From positions 372,001 to 436,000 of the forward strand of contig NW_026933720.1 in the NCBI RefSeq assembly GCF_032062105.1: a DNA stretch of 64,000 nucleotides, given 5' to 3'. The DNA is from Saccostrea cucullata. Taxonomy: Eukaryota. Made by a program: the position numbers and the translations under genes. The notes under the pieces are model-generated. The model saw only the letters and a program-made list of their open reading frames with translations, had not been told where the DNA came from and did no database searches. Each line of letters starts with the position of its first letter. The first letter of the stretch is position 1. Below, piece by piece: positions 52,584 through 63,149 of the stretch.

Positions 52584-54937
52584 ATGCCAGGACACAAAAC
52601 TGAATACTTCAACTGTGTATTGTGCTCTAAAAGAACAAAACCCAATGAAAGGAGGCATCTTGACAAAGGCATAAGAAAATATTTAAGAAAAAGGTTTATG
52701 GTGGAAGGAAGGGAAAATTCTGTCATCTGCAGCAAATGTAGAAGCAATTATTACAGAGATGTTTCATGCCGTAAATCATCTGCAACACCCTGCTCTACCA
52801 CAATTCACAGGGAATGTCCAGCGTCCGAAACAAATGACAACAGAAAACATCTCTCCAGTCCACCATCTGTATCCTTGCACTTAAAATCCACTGCAAAGAC
52901 TCATGCCTATTGTATCGTTTGTAAGAAACCAGGGCCCAAATTGATAGTAGTGTCACCAGAATGCCGCACATCTGTTTTTATTGAACACAATATATTAATT
53001 CCATCCGGAAATAGATGTTGTCCTGGTCATGTGGAAAATGAACGCTTCACAACTGATGCAATTCAGCAATTACCGACGACAGACAATGCATTTGTTAACA
53101 GAACTACCATCCTAAGTTTACTTCAAGAGATGCGTGTTTTATGTCATAAACATGACAAGTCTTATTTGGACTTTGATGACACCACGACTCTGACCGATAC
53201 AGACTATTTGTCTTTGCTGGGACACAACAAGGAAGATTTCCATACAATATGTGACGCTGTGAAAGATGAAGTGAAACCAACACCGTCTAGGAGTCTAAGA
53301 AAATCTGTTGCCATATTCCTGTGCAAATTAAAGACTGGCTTGTCAAATCAAATACTGTCAACACTTTTCCAAACTTCCAAATCCAGTTTAAGGAGGGCTG
53401 TTAGTGCTGTAAGAGCAGCATTGATGATCAGCTTTGTGCCACACCATCTTGGGTTTGAACACATAAGAAGAGAGGAAGTCATCGAAGACCATACACGACA
53501 GCTAGCACAGACACTGTTTGGTAACATCGAGAAGAAACAGGCCATATTGGTACTGGATGGCACTTACATATACACAGCTAAGAGCAATAATTTCCACTAC
53601 CAAAGACGTTCTTACAGTATCCACAAGGGGAGACCACTAATCAAGCCTATGGTTATCGTAACTACTACTGGTTACTTTGTCTCAATCTTAGGACCATACC
53701 TTGCTGATAATAAAAACAATGATGCATCAATTCTCCAACACATCATCAAAACAAATGCTGAAGATATTCGGAGCTGGCTAAGTGAAGACGACATCTTTAT
53801 TGTTGACCGCGGGTTCAGAGATGCTTTGCCTCTGCTTGAAGATCTTGGAATCCAGGCAGAAATGCCCCGATTTCTGCTCAAGGGACAAAACCAAATGACT
53901 ACTGATGATGCAAATATGAGCAGACTTGTGACAAAGGTAAATAACATGTAAATTCTCACAATAAAGTTATTTACAATTTCTTGTGAAAATATATATTACT
54001 ATGAATAAGTTTTGAAAAAATATTTTTTAGGTCAGATGGGTAGTGGAATCTTCAAACGCACGTATCAAGAGGTGGCGATATTTGGACAAGACACTACCCA
54101 CTAATCAAATTCCCTTCATCGGTGACTATGTCAGGATAGTTTGCGCACTCTCAAACAGATTCTCTCCACCCCTGAGTAAAAGTAACAACACTGAGGCTGA
54201 TGATGCAGAGGCAGCAAAAATGCTCTATCTGTCCAAACAGGTATTTAAGTTGCACAATTGATTTATTGTATAATACCTTAATGTACTAGTAATTGAGCAG
54301 CTGCAAAAATCTGCATTTAAGAATACATTTAACTTTTTTAAATTTCATCTTGCTCATCTCCCTTGAATACATAAGCATATAAGTTATAATTACATGCGTA
54401 TGGCTTTCTTAATAGGTAAATAATCTCAAACGAATGGTTCAAGAGAATGGACTTAACAGAAGATCTACTCAATGGCAAACAGTTCTTGAATGTGAAATTC
54501 AGAATTTCCCCATGTTCGATGAGGATCAGTTGCGGAATTTGACTTGTGGCACCTATCAATTGAAGCTCTCTCGTAGCTATATTCAAGAACACATTGAGGG
54601 AGGATGTGATATTTTCTTCCATAAAGAAAATGATAGGCTCCTAAAGGTGAAAATTCAGAGTCGGCACACATCATCAAAGCAGTATTTAGTTTGGATTGAG
54701 TATTCTGATTACTCTGTAGAGGCATGGTATTGTACCTGCAGAGCGGGTGCCAGAGTTGTAGGCATGTGCTCTCACATAGCAGCCATCATTTGGTACCTGG
54801 CAAAAGGAAGGCATGAACAAAGGACATATGGTGTGCGTGACTGGAGTGAGCATGTCCTTGATGCAGCTGACATCCCACCTGCTTTGGACGAGTCTGACAG
54901 TGATGACAGTAGCTGTGAAAGTGTTCCCGAGGAGTGA
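52584..54937 (+). CDS. Intact DDE_Tnp_4-type transposase (PIF/Harbinger-ISL2EU-like), ~694 aa. Exons 52584-53936, 54031-54240, 54416-54937
   Basis: N-terminal Cys/His zinc-finger-like clusters, HTH region ([15 protein letters not shown]), catalytic LDGTY / VDRGF / RWVVES, C-terminal [19 protein letters not shown]. Two phase-0 GT-AG introns, no stops. Element termini not resolved. Confidence 0.85.
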
Positions 54938-56394: not shown

Positions 56395-57525
56395 TTAAAC
56401 TGACACTGTTACATTTGTAAAATGGTAAACAGCGTTACTGCTTATGAAGTATATATATTTTCTTTAGAGAAGTACATAAGTAAGAAAAGCAAACACTAAA
56501 CTCTTTTCCATGCCTCAGAATTTCTTTGAAAAGACCATGATAAATTGAGATTTATATAAAAATAATTGAATTTTCTCCTCTTTAGAATATATATGATATG
56601 TTTATTACTAATTAAGTTCACATCATGACGTTAAAGTATATATGATTGACGTCATGACGTTAAAGTAAGTAACGGCAACGTCATGACGTTGTAGAATTAA
56701 CATTGAGAACAATACCAAATTCAAACAGCTGTAAAAATAAAACTAGAAGAGATATTGTTAAAAAATAAAATGTTATATAATATACTAATCTAAGAGCATT
56801 GTTTGAAAAAGTTTCATCCGTTTCGATGACAGGGCGGATTTTTGTACATTCTGGCTTAAGTCCTTTATAGAATGTTGGAAACAGAAACCCCTCCCCCCTT
56901 TTGACGTCATTTTCAAGGCCTCATTTGTTTGGACATGAAAAATTTACGATAAAATTACATAGAAGTTCCAGATTAAAGTGAAAATTTCATGTTTTATGGA
57001 ACAATTGTGTCCCGACACAAACCTGAATTAACCGGATTTTTGGATGTCAAATGATCATATCAAAAGAGTTTTTCTCAGTTACACATAGGTCGCAAAAACG
57101 TCGTGTTCGAGGTTGCACCGCCTGGACATACCATTGCTTACACAAAAACATTACTAATTTATTAAAAAATAAAATTAATGACTTATGGTTTATTCTTTAG
57201 ATAGAAAACATGATGCTATTTTGATATTTTAAAATTCATTGATGTGCCTAAAGAAGTTTTAATTTTATGACGCTAGTCCACGAACTTTTTGATAATCCCT
57301 CGTAAACGTTATTTTCCTCTATTGACTGAAAACATATTTGGATATATTATCTTTCTGAAAACAGAAATATATATCATGTTTGTAGAAATTTCTATATCTA
57401 GCTTTAACGCTGTATTTTAACTATTTTATACCCTTTTGTGCATTACAACATAGATATAAATACATTCTTAATTTACGAGGGACGTTCAATAAAAAATGTC
57501 ATCAGCTCGATGCCATACAACATAT

Positions 57526-60500
57526 CGAGGGGTTAATGCCACAACCACGTATCACAAAATTCCTTAAATTTCACTTTTTGTTAGTATAATATGTTATTTG
57601 AGATGGTTTTTTTGGTGTCAAAATATCTTAATTATTGCTTAAGAATTGATATGTTTATTTAAAAATTCATCATCACATTATCTCATATAAAATGACTGAC
57701 CAGTGTCAAAAAGATGGCACCTATGACAAATATGTTGAGTCATACTTAATTACATTTTACAAATTATTTTTTAATCTGGATAAAACACCTTTACTTTACA
57801 TACAGTATTGTGCCTTTTACAAAATACCAGAGCAAGAAGAGAAATGTCACTATTTAAACCATGTATTTTGAGATACGTGGTTTTGGCATTCAGAAATCTA
57901 ACTGGTCAGTAAGTTCTCACAGCATTTCAAACCCCGCAGTGTAAGATGATACCTAACATGTGTATGTAATCTAAGGTTTGCAGCTGTGCTGCAGTATAGT
58001 AATAAGGGATGCTCTTATCTGGCCAGCGAACCTCTGGGAGGAAAATGTGTTATCAGAGCTGCAATAACCTAGCTTTACCATGGAACTTCAAGGAAAACAC
58101 GTGCTTGTGAAAAAGTTGTGAAATAATATATTAACAATGGGATTTTAAGTAAAGAAATGAGTAAGTATCTAGTATAATTCCTACAATAAGTATAAAACTA
58201 TAATGGTGATATACTTTGAAATAAAAAATATGAAGATATTAAGTATACAATCTGATCAATTTTGTCTATTATGTAAGACTTTGTATGTTTCACAAATAAT
58301 CCTTATTAATCAGTTTAATAATCTATTATAAATATTTCGATATTACAGAAAGTGAGTGAATTAAAATGGATTGGGATAATGAAGAAATTTGGGATGAATC
58401 AGTTGTTAATAAAATTCTATCTGAGGAGAGTACAAGCGCATGTGGAAATACATCAAACTGTGACAGTGTAAAAAAAGTTCAGGAAAATAAGAAAACATCA
58501 AAACATGTGAAGAAGAAAAAAATTTCTAATGCTGTAATACGAGCACAAAAAATTGTCAAATTTTATCAGAGATGTAAAAAGCCTGTCCAAAATACAAAGA
58601 AAGAAGAACAAAAGAGAACAAAAACTAAACAAGAAAGTTCGGACAGTGAATACAGCAGTAGTGACAATATCCCGCTGAAGTATTTTAAGGACAATAAAAG
58701 CGCCACGACCCGTAGGAAAAAGGAACAGACATACAGACAACTGTTTGAAGGTGATTGTGAGGATGAAGTGGAATATGACAGCGAAGATTCATACAAACCA
58801 AGCAAAAAGGATCAAAATTCCTCTGACTCCGAGTTTTCCCCTGAGGAAAGTAATGCAGAGAGTGATGTCTCAATGCAAGAGGAAGATCAACCTAAACGTC
58901 ATAAGCATGAAGGGAAAAGGAAAAGCAAGACAAACAAAACCTTTGCAAAAAATCCTGGCACCGCTGTTACGAACAACGTAGAAAAAGCAAAAGAAAGAAG
59001 TTTGCAAGAATCAAAGCTTAATACCTTGATAGCAAATCACCACAAATCCAGGCTTGATAGGCTTCTGGAAGCAAACGGGATGCTGCGGGAAACAATTACA
59101 TCTGATGGTAACTGCTTTTTCAATGCTGCATTATTTCATCTTCCTTCAATAGAAGGGGTTTCAGAGCTGAGGCATTTACTTTGTGATCATATGATAGATA
59201 ATGCAGGAGAATACACAGGATTTTTCTCCTCTCCAGCAACCCTGGATTCAGCAGAACAAGAGTTACTGTGGATGGACTTCAGTATTGAAGTAGATCAATT
59301 AAGAAGGGATGGAATATGGAGCAACAAAGCAGCAGATATGCTTCCACTTGCTTTGGCCAATTTTACTGGCAGACATGTTCGCATTTTTTCAAGTTCATCA
59401 GAGGCTTCTGTCTTAGACATAGAACCTACCATGCAGCGTTCTCAAAATACAAACCATATTTATTTGGCATATGTCGGATCAAGGGGAATATCTGAGCATT
59501 ACGATGGGTGTGTGAAGAAAACGGACCGTATCCAGCAGGCTCCTATGCAAACGTCAGAAAAAAATGCCACTGTAACAGAAACAACCGCAAATGCAGATGA
59601 AAACAATGAGGGCCTTGACACTCCTTTAGAACAGTCCCCTCTAAAAACCAAAACGCAACGAAAAGGAAGACCTAAAGGAACTCCAAAGAAAAAGTCAGCT
59701 TCTTTTATGACACCTCCAAAGAAGAAACTTTTTAGAAAGAGAAAAGCCACTCCAGAAACTTGGAAGAAAAATGTCAGAAAACAATTAAAGTTAACTGGAC
59801 AGCAGTACGTGTCTCAAAGAGGAAAAACTGTTAAAGCGAGGGTCATGAAATCTGTAAATTGCAGTAAATGTAAACTGAAATGTTCCACCAAAGTAACAGA
59901 AGAGAAAAGAAATGAGATCTTCAAAAACTTTTGGTCACTAGGTTCATACGAGCGACAAAAAGATTTTGTGGTATCACACATTGAGGAAAAGAAGACAAGA
60001 ACATATCTGGCAGATGATAACCAACCTGTCAAAAAAAGGCGACAAGTGCACAGAACCTATCATTTTGAGACTGATGGTAGCAGAACCATCATATGTAAGA
60101 AGTTTTTCCTTGCTACCCTTAGCGTTGGGGAGTCGTATATTGACCACGCCATGAAAAACAAATCTGGGGGCGTATTTGCTGGGTCGGACAAGAGAGGGAG
60201 GCATAGACCCTACAACAAGACCACTGAGAGGGCTGCACAGCTGGTTCGAGAACACATCGAATCATTTCCCGCATTAGAGGGTCATTACACCAGAAAAGAC
60301 TCCAACCGAAAATACCTTGGACAGGACTTGAACATAACCAAAATGTATGAGCTTTACTTACAGCTACATAAGGGAAATTTGAGAGAAGATGAACTGGTTA
60401 GTCAGCCCATCTACAGGCGCATTTTCAATGAAGAATACAATTTCTCCTTCCATATTCCCAAAAAGGATCAATGCTCTCTCTGTGTTAACTACCACAAATC

Positions 60501-62295
60501 AGTCAGTAGCAATACTACTACAGAAAAAGAAAAGGAAAACTTTGAAAAACATCAAGAACGAAAAAAACGTGCCAGAGAAGAAAAGCAAAAGGATAAAACA
60601 ACTGCCAAGTCCAGAAATGACACTTTTGCAGCTACATTTGATCTCCAAGCTGTCCTTCATACACCATGCTCCCTTGTGAGTCAGCTGTACTACACTAGGA
60701 AACTAAGTTGCTACAACTTGTCGATTTATAATTTAGGTAGCTCAAATGCAACATGTTATCTGTGGTCAGAGGTTGAAGCTAAGCGTGGATCCTGCGAAAT
60801 TGGAACCTGTCTATATTTACAGTTGTTGTCATTGCCTTCTAGTATCAAACATGCAATTCTTTATTCCGATGCCTGCTCAGGACAAAATAGGAACCAATTT
60901 ACAGCCACAAGTCTAATGCATGCTGTCTCATTCTTACCAAACCTAGAGATAATAGATCATAAATTCCTGGAGAGTGGACATACCCAGATGGAATGTGACA
61001 GCATGCACTCTGCCATTGAGTTTGCAAAGAAGAAAACGGAAATATACATTCCACAGCAATGGTCAACAGTAATCAGAATGGCAAGAAGAAAAGATCCATA
61101 CAACGTCGTTCCTCTTACACATGAGGATATATGGGATTTTAAGAAAGTGCAGTCCCAGTCAATGAAATACAGCAAAGTGGAGTACAATGGCACAAAGATC
61201 AACTGGCTTAACATCAAATGGCTCCGATTTATGAAAGAAGATTCTGAAAACATCCTCTTTAAATATGATTTTGAGGAGGAATTTAGGAAGATGAAAGTAA
61301 CTGGGAGTGGAAAACGAGGAAGACCAGAAAAATCCAAAAATCTTCCAAGAAAATACAATGGAAAACAGCCCGTTTCACAGGCAAAGAAAAAAGACCTTTT
61401 AAACTTGTGCAAATCTAAAGTCATCTCTCCAGAATACCATGACTATTACAAGAACTTGCCATGCAGCAACAATGTTGTGGATAGACTTCCTGAGCCTGAT
61501 GCCGATGAAGATGACACCGACAGTGAAACGGAATAAATGCTGTTTCTACCATTATGTGTACTGTGTATTAAGTTACATACATGTATATACAGTGGTGAAT
61601 ATATCATACTTGGATTAAGTGGTTCTTTGTGCATGATTTTTGTTTATGTCTTTGTTCTTACGGTGTTTATGCTTATGTTTTATTTTGGATTATGTTGGTA
61701 TATGTATTGGCAAAACAAATTATTTTTCGGTAATGGTTTGCAACATGATTTTTATGTATAATACATCTCTATTCCTACAAAACCATATCCACGCATAAAG
61801 CACTACAACTTTAATACTATTGTAAAATCTGTTCATATAATAGATACAAAGAATGCAAAAACAATGTAACTTTCTGTGCTGTGTTTTATCACCTATAGAT
61901 TCTATCCTTCGTATGTGATTTACACCAGCCATAACGGCGTATCTACAGAAACGATGTTTTGTCACTTGTTTTTAGAACAATGGAAATTGGATGTATTAGA
62001 GCCAGAACGACGTATCTCAGAATGCAAGCTTTATGCATGTATTGAATAATTAATATAAACAACATGTCTCAAACCATAAAACCTTACATTTTAAATTTTG
62101 ATTTAAGCATAATTCTGGTGAATTATGGTTGTTGCATAAGTGGCAATAGGTAAATAATGGTATACCAAGTTGACTAAAACAGATAAATTATCTTTAATAT
62201 GCATGTAAGTATTTTTATTTTTGGCTCAAACTTTGTCGGCCATTTTCTCCACAATGTATCTTATAGGGATAAGTGGTTGTGGCATTAACCCATCG
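57526..62295 (+). mobile_element. Complete Sola1-like DNA transposon (~4.77 kb)
   Basis: 28-bp TIRs cgaggggttaatgccacaaccacgtatc (57526-57553) and gataagtggttgtggcattaacccatcg (62268-62295), 2 mismatches; 4-bp TSD ATAT (57522-57525 and 62296-62299) fits the AWWT target of Sola1; single long ORF inside. Confidence 0.85.
58366..61536 (+). CDS. Sola-type DDD transposase with an N-terminal OTU-like cysteine protease domain and AT-hook, 1056 aa
   Basis: OTU-like SDGNCFF (D247/C250)...IYLAY..EHYD (H378); RKGRPK AT-hook; FHIPKKDQCSLC; catalytic FDLQ (D759), YSDACSGQNRN (D835), GHTQMECDSMH (D878). Uninterrupted ORF. Confidence 0.88.
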   Translation: MDWDNEEIWDESVVNKILSEESTSACGNTSNCDSVKKVQENKKTSKHVKKKKISNAVIRAQKIVKFYQRCKKPVQNTKKEEQKRTKTKQESSDSEYSSSDNIPLKYFKDNKSATTRRKKEQTYRQLFEGDCEDEVEYDSEDSYKPSKKDQNSSDSEFSPEESNAESDVSMQEEDQPKRHKHEGKRKSKTNKTFAKNPGTAVTNNVEKAKERSLQESKLNTLIANHHKSRLDRLLEANGMLRETITSDGNCFFNAALFHLPSIEGVSELRHLLCDHMIDNAGEYTGFFSSPATLDSAEQELLWMDFSIEVDQLRRDGIWSNKAADMLPLALANFTGRHVRIFSSSSEASVLDIEPTMQRSQNTNHIYLAYVGSRGISEHYDGCVKKTDRIQQAPMQTSEKNATVTETTANADENNEGLDTPLEQSPLKTKTQRKGRPKGTPKKKSASFMTPPKKKLFRKRKATPETWKKNVRKQLKLTGQQYVSQRGKTVKARVMKSVNCSKCKLKCSTKVTEEKRNEIFKNFWSLGSYERQKDFVVSHIEEKKTRTYLADDNQPVKKRRQVHRTYHFETDGSRTIICKKFFLATLSVGESYIDHAMKNKSGGVFAGSDKRGRHRPYNKTTERAAQLVREHIESFPALEGHYTRKDSNRKYLGQDLNITKMYELYLQLHKGNLREDELVSQPIYRRIFNEEYNFSFHIPKKDQCSLCVNYHKSVSSNTTTEKEKENFEKHQERKKRAREEKQKDKTTAKSRNDTFAATFDLQAVLHTPCSLVSQLYYTRKLSCYNLSIYNLGSSNATCYLWSEVEAKRGSCEIGTCLYLQLLSLPSSIKHAILYSDACSGQNRNQFTATSLMHAVSFLPNLEIIDHKFLESGHTQMECDSMHSAIEFAKKKTEIYIPQQWSTVIRMARRKDPYNVVPLTHEDIWDFKKVQSQSMKYSKVEYNGTKINWLNIKWLRFMKEDSENILFKYDFEEEFRKMKVTGSGKRGRPEKSKNLPRKYNGKQPVSQAKKKDLLNLCKSKVISPEYHDYYKNLPCSNNVVDRLPEPDADEDDTDSETE

Positions 62296-62314
62296 ATATG
62301 AATCATATACCATT

Positions 62315-63024
62315 CATCTTCGCTAGCCAAGGGTTTCCGATCCGATACCTACTCTACAACCCTTGGCAGATTTAGTCCTATCAAACGGGAACTTTGATTG
62401 CGCCGCCTATCGCCGTAATTGAGTTAAGTCCCTTGAAGCTCTTTAACATTTGTCCAATGAAAATAGCTGTAACATACGTAGATCAATATGACGTTTGAAA
62501 CAATATGGCGACCTCCATCTGGAATATATCCAAACAACTTCTTACAGCTGTGGGCAGTGGGCACGCCTCAAAAGTGGTAGAAAGTATCGTTCTTCGTGGA
62601 CTTTTAGTCAAGAGTTTGACACTACTTTCTACTTGTTGCCGTATCAATTATTATCAATGAGCCGTGACATTTGATTGGCTTAAATTGATGCATCTAAAAT
62701 GCGGAACACGGACTTATGTGGTCCTTTCAATAATTCTTGAAAACATATATAATTAAGAGAAAAAAATTCAAATTAATTAATCCCTTGTTTCTTAAGCATA
62801 GATCACGTCCTAACTTTCATCTATTGTAAATATTACTTTTATTTTGTGCATAAAACACGAACAGACTGTAATTCAGCCGAAAATCGTCGATTAGTAAAAA
62901 CTTTGCGAAGACTCTGACTTCGCAGCCAATCAAATTCGTTTGCGCAAGTTCTAAAATTTTCGGCCAAATCTGCCAAGGGTTGTAGAGTAGGTATCGGATC
63001 GGAAACCCTTGGCTAGCGAAGATG
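62315..63024. mobile_element. Non-autonomous TIR element (MITE), P- or hAT-like
   Basis: Perfect 59-bp TIRs starting catcttcgctagccaagggtttccgatc; 8-bp TSD ATACCATT (62307-62314 and 63025-63032). Confidence 0.9.
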
Positions 63025-63149
63025 ATACCATTAAGCTTGACTTTCTCTAATTATTGAATCTTTAATGAGTTGATAACAGTTTATTTGATCACTTTTCATC
63101 ACACAGTTCTTTTGTGAGAAAATGGAAAACAAGAGCTAGTCGAGACACT

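What the first reader, a model, noticed from the sequence alone, without database searches (positions are those of the whole stretch)
57526..62295. Complete Sola1-like transposon whose transposase carries an apparently catalytic OTU deubiquitinase domain
Seen: near-perfect TIRs, ATAT TSD and one uninterrupted 1056-aa ORF. Residues ~240-385 (nt ~59080-59510) show the OTU pattern SDGNCFF...W...IYLAY...EHYD (D247/C250/H378/D380), followed by an AT-hook and a Sola-type DDD core. Established: OTU domains cleave ubiquitin or UBL conjugates, and occur in some Helitron proteins, vertnin and viral polyproteins. Inference: a young, possibly active cut-and-paste element with its own deubiquitinase, which could counter transposase degradation, H2A-ubiquitin silencing or ubiquitin signalling at its own DNA breaks. 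I am not aware of this fusion being characterised in Sola1, but cannot check.
Basis: partly seen in the sequence, partly recalled or inferred. Interest (0 to 1): 0.85.

Follow-up and report, generated by a model that had tools for sequence, protein, structure and literature searches.

The report
Mollusc Sola1 transposons carrying deubiquitinases
This is an intact cut-and-paste jumping gene whose cutting enzyme is fused to a probable ubiquitin-removing enzyme; the fusion is kept across dozens of related elements in clams, mussels, oysters and snails, and a sister group uses an unrelated ubiquitin-removing domain instead, which makes it a handy system for testing why transposons carry such enzymes.

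Summary
Observation confirmed. 57526-62295 is a complete Sola1-type element: 28-bp TIRs (26/28), ATAT duplication, one 1056-aa ORF with an RNase H-fold D759/D835/D878 core. Residues 225-385 are a real OTU domain (model pLDDT 94; Z 16.7 to Otu2, 16.1 to OTUD3). It is not a one-off. 67 related transposases carry a full OTU and 63 keep both Cys and His. All named carriers are bivalves or gastropods. dN/dS against a complete Pinctada element is 0.15. New here: a separate Sola1 clade in Mercenaria and Dreissena has a VTD (herpes-tegument-like) deubiquitinase domain instead, inside TIR/TSD-bounded elements. Corrections: OTU on a cut-and-paste transposase is already known (Ginger1). 'Young, active' is weak: one complete copy, six TIR ends in the assembly, trace RNA, while an OTU-less Sola1 family in the same genome has seven 99%-identical copies. 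The AT-hook is not conserved. No held paper describes Sola1+OTU or Sola1+VTD, but Repbase and Bao 2009 were not readable. Enzyme activity and substrate are untested. The scan had no earlier Sola-OTU note. New variant of a known kind.

The parts
57522..57525 (.). Left target-site duplication ATAT
57526..57553 (+). Left TIR, 28 bp, 5'-CG terminus
   Evidence: 26/28 match to the right TIR
57865..57890 (-). Subterminal inverted copy of the inner part of the left TIR (24/26); a weaker matching stretch lies at 61987-62033. Possible extra transposase-binding sites (inference)
   Evidence: I2, I4
58366..61536 (+). Single transposase ORF, 1056 aa (P0001)
   Evidence: 78% identical over aa 213-1056 to Pinctada imbricata FSP39_016707
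58366..59010 (+). aa 1-215: low-complexity charged N-terminus (45 K/R, 41 D/E, 27 S), no Pfam domain, variable in length among relatives
59038..59520 (+). OTU domain aa 225-385: D247 (59104), C250 (59113), W318, H378 (59497), Y379, D380 (59503)
59662..59676 (+). Degenerate AT-hook-like K433-G-R-P-K in a poorly conserved linker; not a family feature
   Evidence: 3 of 64 relatives
59701..60597 (+). aa 446-744: conserved Sola region with a basic patch and Cys/His clusters (C499/C502/C506/C577; C703/C706/H729); DNA- and zinc-binding inferred
   Evidence: dN/dS 0.04
60598..61101 (+). RNase H-fold catalytic core aa ~745-912 with D759 (60640), D835 (60868), D878 (60997)
   Evidence: Z 10-11.6 to retroviral integrases, Mos1, Metnase
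62268..62295 (-). Right TIR
62296..62299 (.). Right target-site duplication ATAT

Best explanation
An autonomous-looking Sola1 cut-and-paste transposon of a mollusc lineage whose single protein has an accessory, catalytically intact OTU deubiquitinase ahead of the DNA-binding and DDD core. Shown: the anatomy, both folds, conservation of both active sites, purifying selection on the OTU, co-divergence of OTU and core, and an unrelated deubiquitinase fold (VTD) in a sister clade. Inferred: the core binds the TIRs, excises the element and inserts it at A-N-N-T (mostly ATAT) targets. The tethered OTU removes ubiquitin chains locally, from the transposase itself or from proteins at the DNA ends it holds. 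My split within that step: protecting the transposase from degradative chains about 0.45; damping ubiquitin signalling at excision and insertion breaks about 0.35; removing repressive histone ubiquitin about 0.2. The activity improves the element's survival but is dispensable, since OTU-less Sola1 families transpose in the same host.
For: OTU fold: AF2 pLDDT 94; Foldseek E 7e-8 to DUBA; Z 16.7/16.2/16.1 to Otu2/OTUD1/OTUD3; profile E 2.6e-14 to OTUD3. Of 67 full OTU domains on Sola cores, Cys 65, His 65, both 63; an aromatic residue follows the His in 67/67 and W318 is kept in 64. dN/dS window vs Pinctada: OTU 0.15 (95% 0.07-0.25), core 0.04, linker 0.46. OTU and core distances correlate, Mantel rho 0.76, n=47. 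Relatives are complete elements with 5'-CG TIRs and 4-bp A/T targets. VTD-Sola1: P0117 and P0069 pass the PF04843 cut-off, keep Q-C and D-P-H, have the Sola core and TIR/TSD, and form their own clade 99/95 with P0248. Helitron VTDs are proven deubiquitinases preferring K48 and K63 chains (PMC9741609).
Against: No activity test. Transposon OTU domains had not been assayed as of PMC9741609. P0001 alone scores under the Pfam cut-off. dS is near saturation (1.3-2.8), so the ratios are rough and rest on one pair. The Mantel result is expected from shared descent and shows co-inheritance, not functional coupling. An OTU-less family is the more recently amplified one in this genome. RNA over the ORF is at trace level. 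The structure matches span enzymes of different linkage preference, so no substrate can be read from them.
Confidence: 0.72

Rival explanations
1. The OTU is an active protease but works as a self-processing enzyme (cutting off the charged N-terminus or itself, as some viral proteases do) or acts on a ubiquitin-like modifier such as NEDD8 rather than on ubiquitin.
For: It sits between a variable low-complexity N-terminus and a variable linker. Two of three tested Helitron VTDs also cleave NEDD8 (PMC9741609).
Against: The closest folds are cellular ubiquitin-specific OTUs, ahead of viral ones (Z 16 vs 12). The aromatic residue after the His, typical of deubiquitinases (own knowledge; the motif is named in PMC9741609), is kept in 67/67. 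The linkers show no conserved cleavage motif in the consensus.
Confidence: 0.12
2. The OTU is a non-catalytic ubiquitin-binding or targeting module, or a passenger captured from a host gene or a Helitron with no role in transposition.
For: Four of 67 members lack Cys or His. The genome holds at least 149 OTU loci, many in Helitron-like ORFs. Many Sola1 families lack the domain.
Against: Cys and His are kept in 63/67 domains that are only 25-65% identical. dN/dS is 0.15. Sola OTUs are far from the six Helitron OTUs sampled. A second deubiquitinase class was recruited independently.
Confidence: 0.1
3. The locus is a domesticated host gene kept for a host function.
For: Only one complete copy, with an intact ORF.
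Against: Intact TIRs and TSD; related fragments at other insertion sites; a complete TIR-bounded relative with unrelated flanks in Pinctada; almost no RNA in three poly-A libraries.
Confidence: 0.04

Closest known systems
Sola1 DNA transposons (Bao et al. 2009, PMID 19174482; paper not held, features taken from PMC3845634 and own knowledge)
   Same: Short TIRs, 4-bp AWWT/AWDT-type target duplication, single large transposase with a DDD triad; size near the 5.4-kb mean of bivalve Sola1 (PMC10294476).
   Different: N-terminal OTU (or, in a sister clade, VTD) domain, not mentioned for Sola1 in any held paper. Named insect Sola1-like proteins with long N-termini lack it.
Ginger1 transposons with OTU or Ulp1 (PMC2836005)
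   Same: Cut-and-paste transposase fused to a ubiquitin/UBL protease; alternative protease classes in sister families; same hypothesis of a role at DNA breaks.
   Different: Ginger1 has a Gypsy-integrase-like core, CCGG/CCGT targets, 40-270-bp TIRs and a C-terminal protease. Here the core is Sola type, the target ATAT and the OTU N-terminal.
Helitron/Helentron RepHel proteins with OTU and/or VTD (PMC9741609, PMC6431247)
   Same: OTU and VTD interchangeable or combined on a transposon protein; VTDs shown to be active deubiquitinases.
   Different: Rolling-circle mechanism, no TSD of this kind. That paper names Helitrons as the main carriers and mentions only unspecified transposon-associated domains in cnidarians; it does not mention Sola.
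Cellular OTUs Otu2/OTUD6, OTUD1, OTUD3, OTUD5 (DUBA)
   Same: Fold (Z 15.7-16.7, rmsd 2.5-3.1 over about 140 residues) and D-x-x-C...H-x-D arrangement.
   Different: 16-22% identity; linkage specificity cannot be transferred.

Membership tests
Sola1 | Terminal inverted repeats bounding the element | tested here: met
   28 bp, 26/28
Sola1 | 4-bp AWWT/AWDT target-site duplication (hallmark per PMC3845634) | tested here: met
   ATAT on both sides here and in L063, L064, L068; ATGT in L069
Sola1 | RNase H-fold transposase with a conserved DDD triad | tested here: met
   D759/D835/D878 nearly invariant; fold matches integrases and mariner transposases
Sola1 | Sequence grouping with Repbase Sola1 references rather than Sola2/Sola3 | not testable with these tools
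   No Repbase or Sola profile on hand. Assignment rests on the TSD, the termini and the S-D-x-C-x-x-Q-N-x-N and G-H-x5-D-x2-H motifs recalled as Sola1-type (own knowledge).
OTU protease family (PF02338) | Pfam gathering score 23.3 bits | tested here: inconclusive
   P0001 21.8 bits over the full profile; 27 of 30 family members match at E<0.01, best 7e-12; P0255 passes at 25.5 bits
OTU protease family (PF02338) | OTU fold | tested here: met
OTU protease family (PF02338) | Cys-His-Asp/Asn triad with oxyanion-loop Asp | tested here: met
   D247/C250/H378/D380; 63 of 67 relatives keep Cys and His
OTU protease family (PF02338) | Isopeptidase activity on ubiquitin or a UBL | not testable with these tools
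   needs a biochemical assay
Ginger1 | Gypsy-integrase-like core, CCGG/CCGT TSD, C-terminal protease | tested here: not met
   no rve hit, ATAT TSD, N-terminal OTU; definition
Helitron/Helentron | Rep and helicase domains | tested here: not met
   no such Pfam hit in P0001; DDD core instead

The most novel reading that the evidence does not exclude
Aquatic-invertebrate Sola1 transposases have repeatedly gained, swapped or lost an active deubiquitinase module, using two unrelated folds (OTU and VTD), because their hosts restrict transposases through ubiquitin; a single Cys-to-Ala change would expose that restriction in an ordinary excision assay. VTD on a TIR-bounded DDD transposase would be a new carrier for that enzyme class.
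Probability: 0.4. Interest if true: 0.75.

Novelty: new variant of a known kind. Interest (0 to 1): 0.52.

Why it matters
Ubiquitin and UBL proteases on transposon proteins (Ginger1, Mutator, Helitron) have been noted since at least 2010, and their role in transposition is still a guess (PMC2836005; PMC9741609 states that transposon OTU domains were untested). This lineage adds a further superfamily and shows two unrelated deubiquitinase folds in sister clades, which argues for selection on the activity itself. It also supplies a compact test system: a 4.8-kb element with one uninterrupted ORF, natural OTU+, VTD+ and protease-less relatives, and natural Cys-less variants. It is not a new kind of system.

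Tried and rejected
Single-sequence search of the OTU against PDB sequences gave only E 0.4; the family profile was needed. The first length-limited search found only the Pinctada relative; the wide family came. A single origin of the OTU on the sampled core tree was rejected (AU p 9e-6, LG+G4, 46 chosen rows), so 'one OTU clade' from the fast tree (24 of 26) is too simple. Capture from the host's Helitrons was not supported (only six Helitron OTUs sampled). A search for kin of the host ankyrin-OTU ORF found nothing (length-limited, 3' part only), so donor and recipient cannot be ordered. Recent horizontal transfer with Pinctada is not indicated, since dS is about 2. The AT-hook was rejected as a family feature. 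No empty-site read was found. The host species was not identified by my own tests.
Full report
Observation. The element runs 57526-62295 (4770 bp). Its 28-bp ends match at 26 positions and begin 5'-CG; ATAT lies on both sides. A weaker inverted copy of the inner TIR sits at 57865-57890. One ORF, 58366-61536, encodes 1056 aa. There are no N stretches in the region.

The core. Residues 680-1000, folded with 80 relatives (pLDDT 91), match retroviral integrases, Mos1 and Metnase at Z 10-11.6. D759, D835 and D878 are present in 147/149, 146/147 and 144/147 aligned relatives. The 4-bp A/T duplication is the Sola1 hallmark quoted from Bao 2009 in PMC3845634. I could not compare with Repbase references, so the split from Sola2/3 rests on the TSD and on motifs recalled from my own knowledge.

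The OTU. Pfam OTU spans aa 246-379 over the whole profile at 21.8 bits, just below the cut-off. A profile of 30 relatives hits OTUD3 at E 2.6e-14 and yeast Otu2 at 3e-12. The model (pLDDT 94) matches DUBA at Foldseek E 7e-8 and Otu2, OTUD1, OTUD3 and DUBA at Z 15.7-16.7. D247, C250, H378 and D380 occupy the catalytic positions.

It is a lineage, not an accident. The nearest relative, in Pinctada imbricata, is 78% identical over aa 213-1056. It lies in a complete 5478-bp element with nearly the same TIR, ATAT duplication and a 1286-aa ORF longer than the annotated protein. Searches of cluster representatives and of the 90% library gave 87 proteins with both OTU and core. After dropping near-copies, 67 have a full OTU; 63 keep both Cys and His, all 67 have Tyr or Phe after the His, and 64 keep W318. 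Every named carrier is a mollusc: Pinctada, four Mytilus species, Mercenaria, Mya, Batillaria, Littorina. Named beetle and butterfly relatives with long N-termini have no OTU. Many carriers come from unnamed metagenome contigs, so the host range may be wider. Three further loci examined (L064, L065, L066) also have TIRs starting 5'-CG and A/T-rich 4-bp flanks; the two flanks differ at one letter in L065 and L066 (L064's ends are one base inside those printed).

Selection and history. Window vs Pinctada gives dN/dS 0.15 (0.07-0.25) for the OTU, 0.04 for the core and 0.46 for the linker, with dS near saturation. Tree distances of OTU and core correlate (Mantel rho 0.76, 47 proteins), which shows long co-inheritance, not function. 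On a fast tree of 134 cores, 24 of 26 OTU carriers fall in one group (rows covering under 380 aa left out; many unlabelled rows are truncated gene calls). A careful tree of 46 chosen rows needs 3-4 changes, and one OTU clade is rejected (AU p 9e-6; LG+G4, no root). So the domain was lost or moved between families more than once; direction cannot be told. Sola OTUs are distant from six Helitron OTUs of the host genome, while a host ankyrin-OTU ORF groups among them.

A second deubiquitinase class. Scanning OTU-less relatives showed that P0117 and P0069 (Mercenaria mercenaria, XP_053396810.1 and XP_053395869.1) begin with PF04843 above the cut-off. P0248 (Dreissena) and P0238/P0245 also match. 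They keep Q-C and D-P-H (P0238 is cut short of the Cys), the VTD catalytic pattern described in PMC9741609. Both Mercenaria genes sit in complete 8.3-8.4-kb elements with 5'-CG TIRs and ATAT or ATGT duplications. The three on the tree form a clade (99/95). Helitron VTDs are proven K48/K63 deubiquitinases. The VTD lies at the very N-terminus, 430-620 residues before the core, so it is an independent recruitment rather than an exact swap.

Activity in this host. The assembly has one complete copy; other matches are fragments at 76-98%. A TIR pattern finds six ends in all, two of which share a flank. Three poly-A libraries show depth 0-5 over the ORF on both strands, and one shows none. A DNA run, possibly of another individual, holds variant copies across the whole length, some with frameshifts. 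In contrast an OTU-less 809-aa Sola1-like family has seven copies over 99% identical. The element looks competent but is not shown to be active, and the OTU is not required for Sola1 spread in this genome.

Mechanism. Shown: anatomy, folds, conservation, selection, two protease classes. Inferred: the core cuts and pastes; the tethered OTU strips ubiquitin near the transpososome, most likely to keep the transposase from degradation, with break signalling a close second and histone ubiquitin third. Overall confidence 0.72 for an active accessory deubiquitinase; the substrate is open.

Comparison with what is known. Ginger1 cut-and-paste transposases carry C-terminal OTU or Ulp1 domains, Mutators carry Ulp1, Helitrons carry OTU, and the same functional idea was offered in 2010 (PMC2836005). 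PMC9741609 notes OTU/VTD exchange in Helitrons and herpesviruses and that transposon OTUs were untested. Searches of the held library found no paper joining Sola1 with OTU. Bao 2009 and Repbase could not be read, and UniRef already auto-names several of these proteins 'OTU domain-containing'. I put the chance of an earlier description in Repbase at about 0.25.

The host was not identified by my tests; an earlier unchecked note on this genome calls it an oyster, which fits the relatives found.

Verdict. New variant; interest 0.52.

Noticed in passing
window 62315-63024: 710-bp MITE with perfect ~59-bp TIRs starting CATC and an 8-bp duplication (62307-62314 / 63025-63032), 19 bp right of the Sola1 end; at least 40 full-length copies at 93-98% (402 candidates). 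hAT- or P-like by TSD length (inference).
   Followed up: partly
window 52584-54937: Two ORFs (455 aa with DDE_Tnp_4 and HTH_Tnp_4; 167 aa with SWIM) that look like a split ISL2EU/Harbinger-group transposase.
   Followed up: partly
L068 1401-9664 and L069 2356-10749 (Mercenaria mercenaria, GCA_021730395.1): Complete Sola1-type elements whose transposases start with a VTD deubiquitinase domain with intact catalytic motifs; both lie inside annotated host genes.
   Followed up: yes
L025 1249-3483 (-); G000:C16102: 1706-aa open frame ending in many ankyrin repeats plus an OTU that is the closest non-Sola match to the Sola OTU profile in this genome (133 bits). Donor or recipient unknown; the first ~960 aa were not read.
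   Followed up: partly
G000, many contigs: At least 149 OTU-matching loci, dozens in 2100-2850-aa single open frames; those sampled carry OTU and DUF6570, two also VTD, consistent with a large intact Helitron/Helentron expansion.
   Followed up: partly
G000:C3756 25534-47511: Seven OTU matches spaced exactly 3605 bp apart, in 1078-aa open frames (the last 981 aa): a tandem array of an OTU-bearing unit.
   Followed up: no
L042, L044-L049: OTU-less 809-aa Sola1-like family with seven copies over 99% identical, apparently the recently amplified Sola1 family in this genome.
   Followed up: partly
P0163 (Batillaria) and P0167 (Littorina): OTU-Sola1 proteins from two distantly related snails are as close (core distance 0.15) as the window/Pinctada pair; possible horizontal transfer, untested.
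   Followed up: no
window 58162-58349: GT...AG stretch ending 16 bp before the start codon, possibly a 5' UTR intron; no spliced reads were seen at the low depth available.
   Followed up: no
L002/L004 and G000:C7316/C16706: Identical insertions or ORFs on different contigs suggest that the assembly keeps duplicate haplotypes, so copy counts may be inflated.
   Followed up: no
Pfam PF25273 (DUF7869): Recurrent match to the catalytic region of these Sola-type transposases; the DUF probably corresponds to the Sola RNase H core.
   Followed up: partly
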